A DNA stretch of 64,000 bases from Pocillopora damicornis (taxonomy: Eukaryota), in the NCBI RefSeq assembly GCF_003704095.1, contig NW_020845867.1, positions 682,001-746,000 on the forward strand, in the 5' to 3' direction. The notes beneath the pieces are model-generated. The model saw only the letters and a program-made list of their open reading frames with translations, did not search any database and was not told where the DNA came from. Below, piece after piece: positions 25,082 through 32,419 of the stretch; position 1 is the stretch's first letter; each line of letters opens with the position of its first letter. Made by a program: the position numbers and the translations under genes.

Positions 25082-28000
25082 TCAAGCTTTCTTATTGGGT
25101 GTGGGTTGCTGTTTTGGGCAGGGCTCCTCACATGTGTTGTCACGGTTACCAGGAAAGCAAGGCTTGCACACTGCTGCATGTGATTGCAGCTCTGACTCCT
25201 GTAGAATGACAAGGAAAAATGAACAGGCCTTGATTAGATCTGCGATAACTGCGTGCGGCAAATTTTTTTCATATTTTACTCAGCTTGATGTTTGGAATAT
25301 ATCTTCATCAACGTTTCTCTCTTACCTCGTCTTGTGTTAGTCTGAAATATCCACCGCCTCGCTGGTTAACACTCTCTTCCAGCGGAGATTGGCAATTCGT
25401 TCCTGATGATGTGTCAAACTTCAGTAACCTGAACAAACGGGATCTACAAAAGCAAAAACATATTCACGTATCATTGGAGCCATGTTAATCACAAACAAAG
25501 GGTTTTTGCTACTTGTATGACCGCAAAGATAGCAACGACAAGATCGCATATTACTAACCAACTGGGTGATTTTATTTGTGCATGTGCGTACAAATGCGAT
25601 TTACTGGGGTGGAGGAGTTGATCAAGAAGGAATTCTGAACCCTCCCCTTGCTCAATATAATATTTCTGACCCACCCCTGTTTAACCCCACTCCAAAAGTA
25701 CTGACGAGACTCTTACTTGAGACACGAGACAAATCTGTTGAGTATCAGAGACAAAACAGCGACAAGGACTTCATAAAGTAGTACATTTTCAAGCGATGAA
25801 TTCACGTAATAGAGAAAGAAGAAGAACGTCGGCGCTGTAAACCACACCTGCAATAAAGAACAATCAGCACATAAATATCAACAAAAGCAGATTCAGATTA
25901 GTCGGGAATTGTGTCAAATAGCTTGGTACTCTTCCTTTGTTCTTTACGCCGAACGAATAAAGCCAATTCCATTTGTGAAGTCCGATTATACCAGTTAAAT
26001 CCGATGTAGAATCCATATCACACTCGACTTTGCGTAAAACCCGTATTGGAGTTACATCCGGGCCCAAGTCAAACCCGAGTCAAACCCGAGTTCACGTCGA
26101 ATCCAAACCAAGGTTAACTCCAAGAGAGAGAAGGAGCATCGGAAGGTTCGATTCCTCAAGAAGACTCCTATTTCTTTTCTTTTTCTTACGCTCGTGACAA
26201 GACGAAAAACATCTTTACATACTCCAAGGGAGACTTTTACCAGAACTCGAGTAAAATCTGAGTTAACTTGCATCGGAGTCAAAAGCAAATTCCGGATCAA
26301 CTCCGAGGGCGAGTCACATCCGATCTTGACCCAGGTCAAATTCGAAGTCGACTCTAGGCTTAGGTCAAAGTTAGGCTATAAGACTTGCTATGGAACATCG
26401 TGACAAAAACCAACGTGATAAGATATCGGCTTTCTCCATTGCTATTAGACCACCTAATAAATATAGAATATAGAAAAAATTTCATCCCTCCAATCAGGTA
26501 AACGACAGTAATTCTTACCAGCCATTCTGTGTAGCTATAGAATGTATCAGCATAGTAGTAGTAGTTTTCTCGTTGAAGTCTTAACATTACTATTGTAACA
26601 ATGAATGAAGCGAAAATAAAGCCATAGACTCCGACCATAAAGCGATCAGCCAAAGTTAACTCCTGCCAATGAAACAAAACAAAAATTACATATGGGTAAT
26701 TCATAGAAGAACGCACCAGAACAAGGGACGAAATTATTTCTGTAGTAGAATTCTTAGTATTTCCAAATGCCAAGTTACCGGTGTATCAGGTGTTTGTTCA
26801 CTGACAGTGGCATGAAACATAACAGCAGACACCAAAAGTGAACTGTGAATAAAGAAGGAAAAGAAAGAAATAAAGAAACACAAATTTTAGATAAAAAGTT
26901 GTTCTCAAGACAGCCGCTAAACTAAGAAAATTTAGCGCAAACACTTTTAAATAGTGATATTTTTACTTGTTTGGTCTAGCGCACACCGCAGAATCTTCTC
27001 TCGAAAAGGAACTGTGGTTGTTCGAGAAAAAAAACAAATATAGATAGCAAACTTCTCTTCCAGATCGAATTAAATTTTTTTTTTCAGAAGATAAACGTTT
27101 ATTACTTGCTGAATTTCGTCAGCAGAATAGACCGTGGTCTTTTTTTCTTTTCATCAAAAATCCCCTACGTAAGGCAGTAGTTCTTCTTTAAGGCTTGCTC
27201 ACTAAAAAACTAGATCGACATGTAATTAGTCTCAGAAACACATGCATTTAATACACTTACCCATCGATCCACAATCGCATTGAGGCGTCATTTGGTGGAA
27301 TAGAAAATGAAAAACAGACCTGAGGAGGAGAGGAAAAAAGTACATTTTATATGTCACGTTCACTCAGGGGTAGTTTTAACTAACGCCTTAACAATTCTAA
27401 AACAGTAGCTCTCGCCTCGCAATCGGAAATAACTTTGCCAAGTCAAGAGAGAGACCAGTGGTGACAGTATTTTAACTATAAGTGCATTCTACTTGGTCGC
27501 TGAGAATTGACGGGAGCTAATTGACAGCATCATATCTCAGACTCTGTCCACCTGCAATGCACGTTCGACTCTGGTAAGGCAAAAGTATGATAAAAATGTT
27601 GTACGTGAGGTTGTCGCACCAAAAGAACGTACTAAAATGCATTTAACTCTACATGACGGGTTACGCATATAGCTCAGCTCACAGGATGCAAATTGAAATG
27701 GGTTGGAAAAGGCAGCGAGAACTTGTAAACACTTCAGCTTTTCCTTCGCTTTCTCTCCACGTATTGCACCAGTGTAATAATATATCGTGCGACGAGATGG
27801 ATGTGACAATTACATAATTCCACTACACTTTTATTTACATTTTCAAGTAACTTTTCTCGGTATTCAGATACTTACTACAAGCACTATAAAAAGAGGAGGT
27901 AAAAATATCTTGAAAAACGCTGCACGCTTGTGTCTCCTCATGTGAAATAAAAATTCATAGCGAGACACTCCTTGGTCCAAAAACGGGTTGTACCTGAAAA

Positions 28001-31000
28001 ATAAAATGTTTTAAAACAAATCCCATCTCAATCACCAGTATCAATAATATATCTAAGAGAGTTACTTTTAGTTGGGTATTGAGAGTAGGGCAATTTTCAA
28101 TTAACCCTAACTCCCATAAGTGACCAAGACAGAATTTCTCCTTACAATATCTATACAATATCAACCAGATAAGTGATGAGAATAAAGGAAAAGATCAATT
28201 TGGGGATAATTAGTTGATCCAATACCAAATTCTTAGAACTAACGTTATAAGAATTGTATGGTTGAGAGTAGGGAGAATTACAAATTTGATCTTGGAGTTA
28301 AAGGGTTAAGTGTTGAAAGTAATGCAGGAATGCATTGGTTTTCCTCTACTTTGCTCAGTGATTGGTCCAGAAAACTTGCACCACACACTCTAAAAACTAA
28401 CACCAATCACAACCTGGTTGCCAGCTTTTTCTTGCACTTTATGTGGTTGTCTTGTTTTTACTTTGAGTTCTTATTGGCTCTTCAAAAAGTTCACTAATCT
28501 AGGGTATTGTTTTGGGTTTATTATGCATTGTGATTGGATCAGAAATCTGGTGTCACCCTTGCAACAAATAAGATATAAAACCAGTCATAGATTAGAACTA
28601 AGTCCCAGTTTTATTACAATTTAGCATCTGGTTGGTTGAGAAGTTGGCGCATGTTTTTGGGACCAATCAAATAGATTGGAGAAGCAAAACCACTGCAAAA
28701 TCCCAAATTATTTATGATGACACTGATACACTGGTAACATACCTTTCATAAACCATCTGTGACCAAGAGTTGGTATCAAATAACCAGCCAGTATAGTTTA
28801 GTGTTGGTGAAACTCCACCCCGGAATTTGAAATCACTGTCATCTGATCCCTACAAATGCATTTTAAAAAGGAAGCAAGCTTAAGTTGATTTTTGATAACC
28901 AATGAAATTTAAAGAGAAATCAACCAAGAGCATAATGACAGAGCGTTTTCACCCCATGTGACAAGTATGGCGCTATGAATGCTTTTATTGAAACACATTG
29001 CCGACCAAAAATACCCTGAAAAACCCTGGCTTCAGAGGGTTGGAACCCTCCCATTATTTAGTTGGGTGAGTCACCACCAAATGAACTAGGAAGTCACTTT
29101 GGGAATTGAAAGGGTTCTTCATCTTCATAGAGGAATCTGATCGTAATCAAATAAAGTGCTGTAAGTGATAATTTGGCCTGCTGTCTACAGGTCAAAGTAT
29201 TGCATTCACTTGAACAAGTTGGATGAAATGGAGATTGGAAAACTAATCAAAAATAGGTAGCTACATGCCTATCATATTGAAAATTAGTAAACCCTTTACA
29301 CCCTAACATCAATATGCATATTCTCCATACTGTTCCCCATACATTTCCAAAGAGGCTGACAGGGAGAATTTGTTTCACAATCAAGAGCTGCTTTAGTTGG
29401 TGATCATCTCATCTACTTTCATGAATTTCATGCTTGATTCAGGGGTAATATAGGGGCTAAAAGATTAATAGTGCACTTAAGATTTTTGAAATTCTGTACC
29501 TGCATAACTTTCCATCTAAGCTCCTTTGCAGTCATTTCCATATCTTGTATTACAATTTTCAGTGTTTGATTGTCATAGCTGTACAAGAAAAAACAAAGCA
29601 AATTCAAGATCTTTCATTACAAAGTATTGGAACAATTGTTGTAAGCACAAATTGTCAATTAGTAAATTCACCACACTTACGGATAGTCCTGAAGATCTGC
29701 TGCAAAGTTAAAAGCTGATTTCACCCTGAAATACTTTCCTTCATGGCTGGAGACCTGCAAAGATTTCATGTGTATGTTGGAACGTTTTTTGTTTTTGTTT
29801 TTTTTAACACCTTGTTTTACACATCCTCCCATTTTCCCATTCACCTCATTTTACCCATCTCCTTTGTATTTCACTTAGATTTATGACCCACCTACTTCAC
29901 ACTTAGCTGGGCCATAAATCTAAGAAGAAGAAAACAAAGTTAAACTTTGTAACTTGCAGCTTGGACCTCAGACTCAAATGTTAAGAGGTATCAATTTTTT
30001 CCTGAGGAAAAGTGAGCAAAACTAGTTTGAAATTTTGCAGTTACCTGTGGTGTCATAAATGTCATAATTGATCTAAATAAGTTTAGAGGTAACATCATGG
30101 AATATCTCTCTCTCTAAGGGATTAGTTATAAACAGATACTGATGGTTCTACTGACCTCTGCTTGGCCAGCAGCATTTACAAGCTCAAAGCAAGCTCCTCT
30201 AAGACCATCTTTACATTTCTGTTTTGTATACATTGTCTGTCCTTCAGGTACTGTATTATATACAAAAGAAAATGTTCCTGACTTATTTCATACATATTTC
30301 TTATTTATAGCAATATTCTAATGTTCAGAAAGTCCAGTGTTACCTAATGAATGGCCAGCCTTCTATTCCCCTTCTATTTAGTAACTTAGTTAAAAATCTC
30401 ATTTTTGCTCATACTTAAACCCTTTATATACCCAAACATCGGTATGCATTTTCTCCACACTGTCCTCTATACTTTTCCTGTGGTGCTAACAAGGAGAATT
30501 TGTTCAACAGTCAAGAGCTTATTTAGCCGGAGATCATTTCCCTTATTCTCACCAACTTCATGCGTGATTCAGGGGTAATTTTTTTAGGAGAAATTAGATG
30601 CTAGTCACCCTTTAGGATCAAAGGGTTGAAGTGTCAACTAGGGGCAGAGGCAGGAGCCAGAGCAAACAGGTACTGGCCTGAGGATCAGAAAATTATATAC
30701 TATCATTGCCATCATAATAATCATTCTTACTGTTTTTGTTAACATTCTCTCTTCCTTGATTAAAAAATCTTTATCATTATAAGTACTAATTTATATATTG
30801 TTGTTTCTGTTTTGATTATCATCTGCATATCACTATAATCATATTTTGTGATTTTAAACTCCTGATATAGCATGAGAAGGTACAATAATTAAACAGCTAT
30901 TTGTTTCTTGATAGCATCATCTGTCAGTGACATAACAGGCATACAGATTTCACCTAGAGTTTGAGCTAACTCTTGTGTGTGGGAATCTTTTAATGCACCT

Positions 31001-32419
31001 GAGAGGATGTCATTGAAACAAAAAAATCTGAATGTAGTCCACACCTTTGAAGTACAGATAGAAATCAGCATGAAAGGTTCCAGCCTTTAAATCCACAGAA
31101 TGGAGATTTATAAGATAAAGAGCAATCTCAACATACACAGTCTTCTGCTCACTAACAACCTCTGGGCATTTCTCATAATAATACCTGACGAGATAATGTA
31201 AAGATATGTAAACAGATTTTATAGTAGATACACTTAACATCTTACACAACAAAAAACCTTAAAACATTTGATTTAATTCAAAACTTAAGCAAAGATCATG
31301 TGACAAGAAAGGGTACGTTTTGTGAAATTTAGATGCGGTTTCCCTTTGGGATCTTCGTAGGACAAAATCTAAATTTTGTCCGAGGGTGCATTTCAAAAAA
31401 TTTCATTCTGAGGTATGCCAAGTGTTTCATAACGCCATGCAAATATTTCAAACCAATTTCAAAGAAATTCAGTAAAACCTTTTCAGTAAAACCTGCAGCT
31501 CAGCTTTCATTTTTGTCCATTCCAAACGGCAAAGCTTCTTCAATAACCTTTAATTCCATGTAAAGAAGATATCATATTCCAAGTAACATTTTATTGCGTG
31601 CAAGTGCTTCATACAACAAAAAAAATTGAAAAAGGGTAATAGAAGAAATCAGCAATATTTTATGGAGAAAATGACGCGAAAAAATTGATGAATAGCACTA
31701 AAAAGATCAGGCTCAAATGAACTAAAAGTAACCACGTGAGTTGAAGAGGATTTTAACTTAAAACCGGTCATTCAGTTCACTGAACTTTATAACTGCCTGA
31801 AAAGTAAACAGTGTTAAAATCGAGAACCTTACAGGAAAAATTTTTACATCGTGTACACCAATTTATTTATCGAAGTCGTGTGAGGTGAAATAACGCCATT
31901 ATTGTACTAACAGACGGCCATACAGGATGATAGCATCATTACTTTCATTTCCTGATAACAATGTTCTAAAGAACTCCAAACATGGCTAATTGCAAAAATT
32001 TGAGTATGAGGCTGACATAAATTGTCATGTCCGCTGTGGAACACAAGACTAGCGTGGTTGTCGAAGCGAGAAAGTGTTTACTGTGATGTGATCGTGAATT
32101 AATAGCTTTCCATCGTGAATTAATAAGCTTACCATTCTGCTCTGCAATCGTAACCTTTCTTTGAACCCGCAAGATTGCCAGGAATACACGAAGCACAGTT
32201 TGTACAGTTCTCTAAAGAATGGATCGCCCCAGGTTTGTGGCAATGATCACCGCATTTGTCGCAAAATCCGCAGTTTCCATCGTTCAGACACCAGGTGCAG
32301 TTTCGTCCCCGCGATAAGCAATCGTCATCGTCAACATAGGCAACGGACGAACAGAGTTTTAACGATATCACAAGTCCAACTATAACACAGAAACTGTTTA
32401 CAATCCAACTTGAACACAT
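25082..32419 (-). CDS. Cys-less (Pro-loop, GLIC/ELIC-like) pentameric ligand-gated ion channel subunit with N-terminal Cys-rich domain, 505 aa
   Basis: Thirteen GT-AG exons, all phases consistent, 1518 nt: 32419-32133, 31184-31045, 30250-30156, 29754-29681, 29578-29500, 28849-28743, 27993-27876, 27319-27261, 26842-26779, 26662-26519, 25847-25717, 25428-25326, 25198-25082. Motifs: VEIALYLINLHSVDLKAGTFHADFYLYF, FELVN, ADLQDYPYDNQTLKIVI, MRR-HKRAAFFKIFLPPLFIVLVVCFSF (M1), RLWIDGSLLVSAVMFHATVSEQTPDTPELTLADRF (M2-M3). Confidence 0.88.
28101..28309. mobile_element. piggyBac-type MITE
   Basis: TTAA-CCCT...AGGG-TTAA termini with extended TIR (taactccc/ggagttaa). Confidence 0.8.
30416..30629. mobile_element. 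piggyBac-type MITE
   Basis: aacccttta...aaagggtt termini; interior shared with 7042, 29289, 33775, 46811 (reverse) and 50371. Confidence 0.75.

What the first reader, a model, noticed from the sequence alone, without database searches (positions are those of the whole stretch)
25082..32419. Prokaryote-like Cys-less pentameric ligand-gated ion channel in an animal, split over 13 exons
Seen: a complete 505-aa spliced frame. The signature loop is FNFAADLQDYPYDNQTLKIVI, with the conserved YPxDxQ proline but neither Cys-loop cysteine. The extracellular domain is compact and the M3-M4 linker (LQRENYYY) is very short. M2 to M3 (SLLVSAVMFHATVSEQTPDTPELT) aligns with GLIC as I recall it (STLIAHIAFNILVETNLPKTPYMT). 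Established: these are traits of bacterial GLIC/ELIC-type channels, not nAChR/GABA-A/GlyR. I recall Cys-less members being noted bioinformatically in protists and some invertebrates, so the clade may not be wholly new, but I know of no ligand or function. Twelve canonical introns argue against contamination and for an old resident gene. Inference: an uncharacterised chemosensory, pH or ion-homeostasis channel.
Basis: partly seen in the sequence, partly recalled or inferred. Interest (0 to 1): 0.88.

Follow-up and report, generated by a model that had tools for sequence, protein, structure and literature searches.

The report
Cys-less pentameric channel gene in coral
This is a real, expressed 13-exon coral gene for a very divergent pentameric ligand-gated ion channel subunit that lacks the family's hallmark cysteine pair; it is conserved across cnidarians, a 2016 gene inventory already listed the type, and its function has never been tested.

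Summary
RNA contigs from three independent studies show or imply nine of the junctions. Contiguous mRNAs from two other corals confirm all 12.

Mismatches against those mRNAs fall mostly at third codon positions (29/22/180), so the gene is under purifying selection. It is single-copy in this genome and has orthologues across cnidarians (anthozoan, hydrozoan and probably scyphozoan).

Pfam's channel models score below threshold. NCBIfam (E 5e-10), PDB sequence searches (sTeLIC 6.5e-9, GLIC about 1e-6) and an AlphaFold model (Z 22, 2.3 A over 274 residues to GLIC) place residues 106-407 in the pLGIC fold.

Both Cys-loop cysteines are absent (F191, L205). The Pro-loop motif and the pre-M1 arginine are present, and M3-M4 is a three-residue turn.

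Three parts lie outside the channel fold: a 12-cysteine N-terminal module, a fifth helix after M4, and a conserved tail.

Jaiteh et al. 2016 reported one Cys-less cnidarian pLGIC, and NCBI names the Porites orthologue "proton-gated ion channel-like". Ligand, ion selectivity and cell type remain unknown. Earlier notes from this scan cover only this same window, not other DNA.

The parts
32133..32419 (-). Exon 1, aa 1-96. ATG at 32419-32417. Holds the signal peptide (hydrophobic peak at residues 11-29) and a cysteine-rich module with 11 Cys between residues 34 and 92.
   Evidence: tblastn of P0033. Abuts exon 2 in mRNA L003. Hydrophobicity and Cys positions. No PSI-domain match or any other significant Pfam match.
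31045..31184 (-). Exon 2, aa 96-143. Linker with C102, then the first two strands of the extracellular beta-sandwich.
   Evidence: RNA contig pieces 31045-31185 and the joint 31045>30250. Model strands 112-127 and 132-142.
30156..30250 (-). Exon 3, aa 143-174. Carries the conserved cysteine pair C155/C163, a likely disulfide loop at a different site from the canonical Cys-loop.
   Evidence: joint. C155 and C163 are nearly invariant in A1; C155 is also nearly invariant in A3.
29681..29754 (-). Exon 4, aa 175-199. First half of the Pro-loop. F191 stands where the first Cys-loop cysteine would be. Codon P199 is split by the intron.
   Evidence: The 71-nt gap between laid pieces in records 7 and 17 fits this exon. 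Exact abutment in L003.
29500..29578 (-). Exon 5, aa 199-225. Second half of the Pro-loop (Y200, D201). L205 stands where the second cysteine would be.
   Evidence: RNA pieces 29499-29578 and the joint to 28848. D201 and L205 are nearly invariant.
28743..28849 (-). Exon 6, aa 226-261. Includes G246 (the only column invariant in all 27 sequences) and W247, then a long strand.
   Evidence: joints on both sides. Invariant column.
27876..27993 (-). Exon 7, aa 261-300. Invariant hairpin tip at residues 260-267 (the loop C position), the last strand, the pre-M1 arginine R281, and M1.
   Evidence: joints. Invariant columns. Model helix 283-304.
27261..27319 (-). Exon 8, aa 301-320. End of M1, the M1-M2 loop (D311), and the start of M2 (R315 at 0', W317 at 2').
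   Evidence: joints. Alignment to sTeLIC and GLIC.
26779..26842 (-). Exon 9, aa 320-341. M2 pore helix: S321 at 6', V324 at 9', M328 at 13', F329/H330 at 14'/15', E335 at 20', P338 at 23'.
   Evidence: joints. Ungapped alignment to GLIC. Prime numbers come from GLIC mutant names.
26519..26662 (-). Exon 10, aa 342-389. M2-M3 loop, M3 (helix 345-372), a three-residue turn, and the start of M4.
   Evidence: joints. Model. This exon was the query.
25717..25847 (-). Exon 11, aa 390-433. Rest of M4 (helix 376-404), a short loop with sequon N405, and a fifth hydrophobic helix (408-444; peak at 411-429).
   Evidence: RNA pieces 25717-25845. Hydrophobicity. The structural alignment to solved channels ends at residue 406-407.
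25326..25443 (-). Exon 12, aa 433-472. End of helix 5 and a low-confidence tail. The acceptor is at 25443, not 25428.
   Evidence: Exact abutment at cDNA positions 1299-1416 of L003. P0033.
25082..25198 (-). Exon 13, aa 473-510 plus the TGA stop (25084-25082). C-terminal motif with four cysteines, conserved in the anthozoan and the probably scyphozoan sequences and absent from the hydrozoan ones.

Best explanation
Shown: this is a functional, single-copy coral gene. It encodes a subunit of the pentameric ligand-gated ion channel (Pro-loop receptor) superfamily that lacks the Cys-loop disulfide. It belongs to a small, very divergent subfamily found across Cnidaria, in unidentified intron-poor eukaryotes, in one protist and in bacterial-looking metagenome sequences.

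Layout, from sequence and model: signal peptide; an extracellular 12-cysteine module; a compact beta-sandwich domain (about residues 106-282); M1 to M4 with an almost absent M3-M4 loop; a fifth transmembrane helix; and a tail of about 65 residues.

Inferred: with no paralogue in the genome, five copies should form a homopentamer in a cell membrane. An extracellular cue would be sensed at the subunit interfaces around the invariant hairpin 260-272, or by titratable groups such as the family-invariant H330. That signal would pass through the Pro-loop D201 to pre-M1 R281 contact and open the M2-lined pore.

Because helix 5 crosses the membrane once more, the tail should be cytoplasmic and available for anchoring or regulation.

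Acidic residues at -4' (D311), 20' (E335) and 24' (D339), with no proline-alanine anion signature before R315, make a cation-permeable pore my best guess (about 55%). Gating by pH or a small ion or metabolite, rather than by a classical transmitter, is also only a guess (about 50%).
For: Gene model and expression.

Purifying selection: mismatches at codon positions 1/2/3 are 29/22/180 against L003 and 34/27/185 against L004.

Copy number and orthologues: single copy in G000. Orthologues in Porites, Acropora, Nematostella, Exaiptasia, Xenia, Paramuricea and Hydractinia, plus an unnamed, probably scyphozoan, sequence, at 55-87% identity.

Superfamily membership: NCBIfam LGIC_1 E 5.2e-10 and TIGR00860 E 2e-9. 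PDB sequence search gives sTeLIC 6.5e-9 and GLIC about 1e-6.

Fold: AlphaFold2 with a 27-sequence alignment has pLDDT mostly 76-91 in the core, with a beta-sandwich followed by five helices. All of the at least 500 Foldseek matches counted are significant, and every one of those listed is a pLGIC; GLIC has a target TM-score of 0.74. VIA-align gives Z 22.1, rmsd 2.3 A and 274 aligned residues, model 106-407 against GLIC 10-315.

Conserved residues: the Pro-loop residues Y198, P199, D201 and the pre-M1 R281 are conserved.

Helix 5: a hydrophobic peak at 411-429 is also seen in P0043-48 and P0060.
Against: Pfam Neur_chan_LBD and Neur_chan_memb stay below their gathering scores.

No experimental data exist on assembly, conduction or ligand.

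The homodimer prediction gave no verdict.

W317 at the 2' pore position is invariant in cnidarians and in P0043-48. It could narrow or block the inner mouth of the pore.

The N-terminal module and the tail are modelled with low confidence.

The structure is a prediction from a shallow alignment. The first attempt, with 14 sequences, failed at pLDDT 39.
Confidence: 0.8

Rival explanations
1. The protein has the pLGIC fold but is not a conducting channel. It would be a pentameric receptor or scaffold with a permanently occluded pore, signalling through the extracellular cysteine-rich module, helix 5 and the cytoplasmic tail.
For: W317 at the 2' pore position is invariant in cnidarians and P0043-48, whereas the shorter relatives have glycine or alanine there. 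The extra domains on both sides of the membrane are conserved.
Against: The gating hardware is conserved: the Pro-loop D201, the pre-M1 R281, the 0' arginine, polar 6' and hydrophobic 9' and 13' positions, and the M2-M3 loop proline. That pattern is what a working channel would keep. I know of no non-conducting pLGIC (from memory).
Confidence: 0.13
2. It is a secondarily Cys-less offshoot of an ordinary metazoan Cys-loop subfamily, like the nematode cases described in PMC4795631.
For: By fold it is as close to GluCl and GABA-A (Z 22.4 and 22.1) as to GLIC. Secondary losses of the cysteines are documented.
Against: Identity to every eukaryotic solved receptor listed is 12-17%. Pfam models built largely on those receptors do not reach threshold here, while none of the 150 listed strong hits in this genome falls at this gene. 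Bacterial sTeLIC and GLIC outrank all eukaryotic solved chains by sequence. The nearest kin are protist and bacterial-looking sequences without the cysteines. The M3-M4 loop is absent.
Confidence: 0.04
3. It is a contaminant, or a recent transfer from a symbiont or bacterium, and not a true coral gene.
For: The nearest non-cnidarian relatives come from unidentified microbial eukaryotes and a high-GC metagenome contig.
Against: The gene has 12 spliceosomal GT-AG introns carrying the host genome's interspersed repeats. Its GC content is like the rest of the window. Orthologues are present across cnidarian classes. No match was found in 185,579 prokaryotic species genomes when scanned with the family's two most conserved motifs.
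Confidence: 0.01
4. It is a decaying or untranslated pseudogene that merely keeps an open frame.
For: None beyond the lack of protein-level data.
Against: Seventy-five to 78% of the nucleotide differences to two other corals lie at third codon positions. The frame is intact in all species sampled, and polyA RNA contigs carry the spliced form.
Confidence: 0.01

Closest known systems
sTeLIC, a bacterial pLGIC from a Tevnia endosymbiont (PDB 6fl9)
   Same: It is the best solved relative by sequence: E 6.5e-9 with the single protein and 6.7e-8 with the profile, aligned without large gaps from the Pro-loop to M3. It also has no Cys-loop cysteines, a short M3-M4 link and an aspartate at -4'.
   Different: sTeLIC is a roughly 320-aa bacterial protein with no N-terminal module, no fifth helix and no tail. 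Identity is low. It has aspartate at 2' where the coral protein has tryptophan. From memory it is gated by alkaline pH; nothing here shows the same for the coral protein.
GLIC, the Gloeobacter proton-gated channel
   Same: The fold match covers the whole GLIC subunit: Z 22.1, rmsd 2.3 A, 274 residues, 20% identity. Sequence E is about 1e-6. It shares the compact extracellular domain, the missing cysteines, the short M3-M4 link and the conserved 14' phenylalanine and 23' proline.
   Different: The coral protein has histidine at 15', not at GLIC's 11' position. It has tryptophan at 2'. It adds about 105 residues in front and about 100 behind. It is a spliced animal gene. The NCBI name 'proton-gated ion channel-like' for the Porites orthologue is similarity-based, not evidence of proton gating.
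Cys-less eukaryotic pLGIC clade of Jaiteh, Taly and Henin 2016 (PMC4795631)
   Same: That paper reports Cys-less Pro-loop receptors in invertebrates, including one cnidarian (Nematostella), grouped with protist channels and without known function. The Nematostella orthologue P0035 is a UniProt 'predicted protein' and is probably that entry.
   Different: I could not verify that P0035 is their sequence. My searches of the paper's main text for an N-terminal domain, a fifth helix or a C-terminal part found nothing. My searches found cnidarian orthologues but no bilaterian member of this subfamily, though those searches are limited by the word index.
DeCLIC and other prokaryotic pLGICs with extra N-terminal domains
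   Same: They follow the same principle: an additional extracellular domain placed in front of the channel's ligand-binding domain (PMC9897478, seen). The relative P0060 carries a Bmp-type binding-protein domain in that position.
   Different: The coral module is a small disulfide-rich unit of about 70 residues with no Pfam match. It is not a periplasmic-binding-protein or DeCLIC-type lobe.
Canonical metazoan Cys-loop receptors (GluCl, GABA-A, GlyR, nAChR)
   Same: They share the same subunit fold (Z 21.7-22.4), the Pro-loop proline and aspartate, the pre-M1 arginine and the 0' arginine.
   Different: The coral protein has no Cys-loop disulfide and no long M3-M4 cytoplasmic loop. It scores below Pfam threshold and is only 12-17% identical. 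The same coral genome holds many canonical loci, and none of the listed matches overlaps this gene.

Membership tests
pLGIC / Pro-loop receptor superfamily | Pro-loop motif: aromatic-Pro-x-Asp in the loop between strands 6 and 7 | tested here: met
   Y198-P199-Y200-D201 in the window. P199 and D201 are conserved in at least 90% of 27 family sequences.
pLGIC / Pro-loop receptor superfamily | Conserved pre-M1 arginine that pairs with the Pro-loop aspartate | tested here: met
   R281 is invariant in A1 and A2 and nearly invariant in A3.
pLGIC / Pro-loop receptor superfamily | Beta-sandwich extracellular domain followed by four transmembrane helices | tested here: met
   AlphaFold2 model. Z 22.1, rmsd 2.3 A, 274 residues to GLIC, with model 106-407 covering GLIC 10-315. 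This is a prediction, not a solved structure.
pLGIC / Pro-loop receptor superfamily | Statistically significant sequence similarity to family members | tested here: met
   NCBIfam LGIC_1 E 5.2e-10 and TIGR00860 E 2e-9. PDB search: sTeLIC 6.5e-9, GLIC about 1e-6.
pLGIC / Pro-loop receptor superfamily | Score above the curated Pfam gathering cut-offs (PF02931 at 26 bits, PF02932 at 28.1 bits) | tested here: not met
   Scores were 11-16 bits for P0024 and P0033. Among 14 family members the best E-values were only 5e-4 (PF02932) and 6e-3 (PF02931). Single exons gave no hit. This shows divergence from the models, not exclusion from the superfamily.
pLGIC / Pro-loop receptor superfamily | Pentameric assembly | tested here: inconclusive
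   The homodimer prediction returned 'no answer'. No pentamer could be folded within the tool's size limit.
pLGIC / Pro-loop receptor superfamily | Ligand- or pH-gated ion conduction | not testable with these tools
   Needs electrophysiology.
Canonical metazoan Cys-loop receptors | Two cysteines flanking the loop, at Pro-8 and Pro+6 | tested here: not met
   F191 and L205 occupy those positions.
Canonical metazoan Cys-loop receptors | Substantial cytoplasmic M3-M4 loop | tested here: not met
   Model helices 345-372 and 376-404 are joined by three residues.
Prokaryotic-type pLGICs (GLIC/ELIC/sTeLIC; NCBIfam LGIC_1) | Cys-less loop, short M3-M4 link, compact extracellular domain | tested here: met
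Prokaryotic-type pLGICs (GLIC/ELIC/sTeLIC; NCBIfam LGIC_1) | Score above the LGIC_1 curated cut-off (500 bits); four-helix subunit of about 300-350 aa | tested here: not met
   Score is 39 bits. The protein is 510 aa with an extra N-terminal module, helix 5 and a tail. It is a spliced eukaryotic gene.
Cys-less eukaryotic clade of Jaiteh et al. 2016 | Phylogenetic placement with protist and invertebrate Cys-less channels | not tested
Supporting leads only: the protist relatives P0043-48 and P0060, and Atlas look-alikes from molluscs, rotifers and diatoms at 0.85-0.87.
PSI (plexin-semaphorin-integrin) domain, for the N-terminal module | Match to Pfam PF01437 | tested here: not met
   No PSI hit at E up to 10 for exon 1, nor at E up to 1 in any of 14 family members. 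The resemblance is only in cysteine spacing, as I recall that domain.

The most novel reading that the evidence does not exclude
The cnidarian gene and its P0043-48 relatives would define a previously undescribed architectural class of the pLGIC superfamily. The class has a disulfide-rich extracellular cap, a Cys-less GLIC-sized channel core with a tryptophan ring at 2', and a fifth transmembrane helix that puts a conserved tail in the cytoplasm. It would have been kept as a single, slowly evolving gene since before the cnidarian classes split, and would be gated by a non-transmitter cue such as pH, an ion or a surface ligand.
Probability: 0.35. Interest if true: 0.7.

Novelty: new variant of a known kind. 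Interest (0 to 1): 0.52.

Why it matters
pLGICs are the best-studied fast transmitter receptors, yet what their Cys-less eukaryotic branch does is still unknown. This branch matters for the question of how bacterial channels became animal receptors.

This gene gives a clean entry point:
- It is a single copy, so there is no heteromer puzzle.
- It is strongly conserved across Cnidaria.
- It is expressed.
- It has orthologues in Nematostella and Hydractinia, which from memory are laboratory models with knock-out and single-cell resources.

The fifth helix and the extracellular cysteine-rich cap, if real, would extend the known architectures of the superfamily. In corals, a pH- or ion-gated channel would also bear on calcification and symbiosis physiology. 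That link is speculation.

Tried and rejected
- Extra exons. I first built a 16-exon model from open frames and splice consensus. The RNA contigs showed that three of my candidate exons (31548-31485, 30998-30954, 30113-30045) are not used.
- Pfam on single exons by reference gave nothing.
- First AlphaFold run. With a 14-sequence cnidarian alignment it failed, at mean pLDDT 39. Only after adding distant relatives did the core fold.
- Homodimer prediction for residues 106-445 returned no answer, score 0.02. This is not evidence either way.
- Motif scan of 185,579 prokaryotic species genomes found no relative.
- A third profile search with the widened alignment found no new members. All these searches depend on shared five-residue words, so bilaterian or more distant kin may have been missed.
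- Literature. Searches for a fifth helix or PSI domain in pLGICs, and for the NCBI name 'proton-gated ion channel-like', found nothing relevant. A 2026 survey of cnidarian pLGICs gave no hit for GLIC, 'bacterial', 'cysteine' or 'orphan' in its main text.
- I could not confirm that the Nematostella entry of Jaiteh et al. is P0035.
- The organism behind P0043-48 stayed unidentified. A neighbouring phosphatase looks like CTDNEP1, which does not settle it.
The window was searched exon by exon by reference. The database protein P0033 stood in for the whole protein.


Full report
**What is in the sequence**

The gene lies on the minus strand. Stop-to-stop frames and a splice-site enumeration gave me a provisional 16-exon model. 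Public RNA data corrected it.

The stretch is held by RNA runs labelled coral or marine metagenome, from 12 studies in all. I laid 25700-31600 on contigs of four runs from four studies. Three of the runs (X1, X9, X14) carry one spliced transcript. Its pieces and joints give exons 31184-31045, 30250-30156, 29578-29500, 28849-28743, 27993-27876, 27319-27261, 26842-26779, 26662-26519 and 25847-25717. A 71-nt gap in the records fits exon 29754-29681. Three of my candidate exons are not used.

A scan of metagenome contigs returned two contiguous coral mRNAs, L003 (510-aa ORF) and L004 (515 aa). Each window exon aligns to them. In L003 the 13 exons abut exactly, at cDNA positions 1-287, 288-427, 428-522 and so on up to 1417-1533.

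All 12 introns are GT..AG, and the exons sum to 1533 nt, or 510 codons plus TGA.

The window was searched exon by exon by reference. For whole-protein work I used P0033, a 510-aa transcript-derived database protein. It matches the window exon by exon and differs, as far as I could see, at residues 29 and 477.

**A working, resident, conserved gene**

Nucleotide differences to L003 and L004 fall at codon positions 1/2/3 as 29/22/180 and 34/27/185. That is the signature of purifying selection.

The window's genome has 234.35 Mb in 4393 contigs and holds only this one copy. The same genome gives 154 exon-level matches to Pfam Neur_chan_LBD, and none of the 150 listed is at this gene. The coral therefore has a large ordinary Cys-loop repertoire plus this one outlier.

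Orthologues exist in Porites lutea (87%), Acropora (85-86%), Nematostella (76%), Exaiptasia (77%), Xenia (67%), Paramuricea and Hydractinia (60%). There are also unnamed sequences that look hydrozoan and scyphozoan. Long invariant runs cover the end of the extracellular domain, M1 and M2.

**What it is**

- Pfam's two channel models score only 11-16 bits, below threshold.
- NCBIfam gives LGIC_1 at E 5.2e-10 and TIGR00860 at E 2e-9.
- Against PDB sequences, P0033 finds sTeLIC at 6.5e-9 and GLIC near 1e-6. The first eukaryotic chain comes at 1.2e-5. It is a Sarcoptes pH-gated chloride channel.
- AlphaFold2 on 14 cnidarian sequences failed. With 27 sequences, including distant kin, it gave mean pLDDT 67 with the core mostly at 76-91. 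The model has a beta-sandwich followed by helices 283-304, 309-335, 345-372, 376-404 and 408-444.
- Foldseek's listed matches are all pLGICs.
- VIA-align gives Z 22.1, rmsd 2.3 A over 274 residues to GLIC (model 106-407 against GLIC 10-315). Values for GluCl and GABA-A are the same.

The defining Pro-loop (Y198, P199, D201) and the pre-M1 R281 are present. The two Cys-loop positions hold F191 and L205. M3 and M4 are joined by three residues.

The identification as a Cys-less pLGIC of GLIC-like architecture therefore stands. By fold alone it is equidistant from bacterial and animal receptors.

**Parts outside the channel fold**

- Residues 1-105 hold a signal peptide and 12 cysteines (positions 34 to 102). 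They have no Pfam match and low model confidence. 'PSI-like' is a pattern resemblance only.
- A separate conserved pair, C155/C163, sits in the extracellular domain.
- After M4 comes a short loop with sequon N405, then a fifth hydrophobic helix (peak at 411-429). A tail follows whose last roughly 30 residues are conserved in the anthozoan and the probably scyphozoan sequences. If helix 5 spans the membrane, the tail is cytoplasmic.

**Pore**

The alignment to GLIC is ungapped from the Pro-loop to M3. GLIC's prime numbering is visible in PDB titles. Together they place R315 at 0', W317 at 2', S321 at 6', V324 at 9', M328 at 13', F329 and H330 at 14' and 15', E335 at 20' and P338 at 23'.

The 2' tryptophan is unusual. 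The histidine at 15' is conserved in at least 90% of the 27 sequences of the wider family. The guess of a cation-permeable pore rests only on the acidic residues D311, E335 and D339 and on the lack of an anion signature. It is inference.

**Wider family**

Profile searches added three kinds of relative:
- Six proteins of 459-485 aa at 33-36% identity (P0043-48). They have the same cysteine-rich front, the 2' tryptophan and a fifth helix. The one I looked up (P0043) is an intronless gene on a 1.5-Mb ENA contig, next to eukaryote-type genes.
- An 860-aa protist protein with a Bmp-type binding-protein domain in front (P0060).
- Sequences without extra parts: two complete 350-aa proteins (P0056/57) and a partial ORF that runs off a high-GC, bacterial-looking contig (L012).

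A motif scan of prokaryotic species genomes found none.

**Known or new**

Jaiteh, Taly and Henin (2016, PMC4795631) list Cys-less Pro-loop receptors in invertebrates, including one cnidarian, and place a lone Nematostella sequence in the Cys-less eukaryote clade. They state that nothing is known of the biology of these channels. My term searches of that paper's main text found no mention of the extra domains. A 2026 cnidarian pLGIC survey gave no hit for GLIC, 'bacterial', 'cysteine' or 'orphan'. NCBI labels the Porites orthologue 'proton-gated ion channel-like'.

The finding is therefore a correct rediscovery of a listed but unstudied type. Its architecture (front module, fifth helix, tail) was not mentioned in any paper my searches of the library returned.

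**Verdict**

Function is unknown. Interest is moderate.

Noticed in passing
window 28064-28457, 29246-29442, 30428-30624, 26094-26290: Intronic interspersed repeats with RNA-contig depths hundreds to thousands of times that of the gene's exons, and many loose ends. The elements at about 29290-29440 and 30430-30610 look by eye like two copies of one element of roughly 170 nt (SINE- or MITE-like).
   Followed up: partly
L006 1-1607: A metatranscriptome contig, probably from a scyphozoan, lacks the 107-nt exon 6. The frame breaks into two ORFs of 226 and 251 aa. This is either an exon-skipped non-productive isoform or an assembly artefact.
   Followed up: no
P0039 (Acropora cervicornis model), opposite residues 187-199 of P0033: The deposited gene model lacks 13 residues of the Pro-loop that every other orthologue has, including the A. 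digitifera model. This is probably an annotation slip at the exon 4 to 5 junction.
   Followed up: no
window below 25082 (3' side of the gene): Transcript contigs run about 690 and 870 nt past the stop codon. One 5310-nt contig in X1 runs about 4.6 kb past it. This is either a long 3' UTR or a merge with the neighbouring gene's transcript.
   Followed up: no
L001 3001-4413 (ENA ERZ25072730, 1.5-Mb contig): An intronless gene for a relative that has the same cysteine-rich front and fifth helix. It lies in a gene-dense contig beside an RdRP-helicase, a CTDNEP1-like phosphatase and an amidase. The organism was not identified.
   Followed up: partly
G000 contigs C2895, C4013, C203, C666 and others: Clusters of canonical Cys-loop receptor exons lie in tandem, for example seven strong Neur_chan_LBD matches within about 100 kb of C2895. 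This points to local expansions of ordinary pLGIC genes in this coral.
   Followed up: no
P0033 residues 155 and 163 (window exon 3, 30250-30156): A nearly invariant cysteine pair eight residues apart in the extracellular domain. It is also present in P0043-48, and as a pair six residues apart in P0056. It is probably a disulfide loop at a site other than the canonical Cys-loop.
   Followed up: partly
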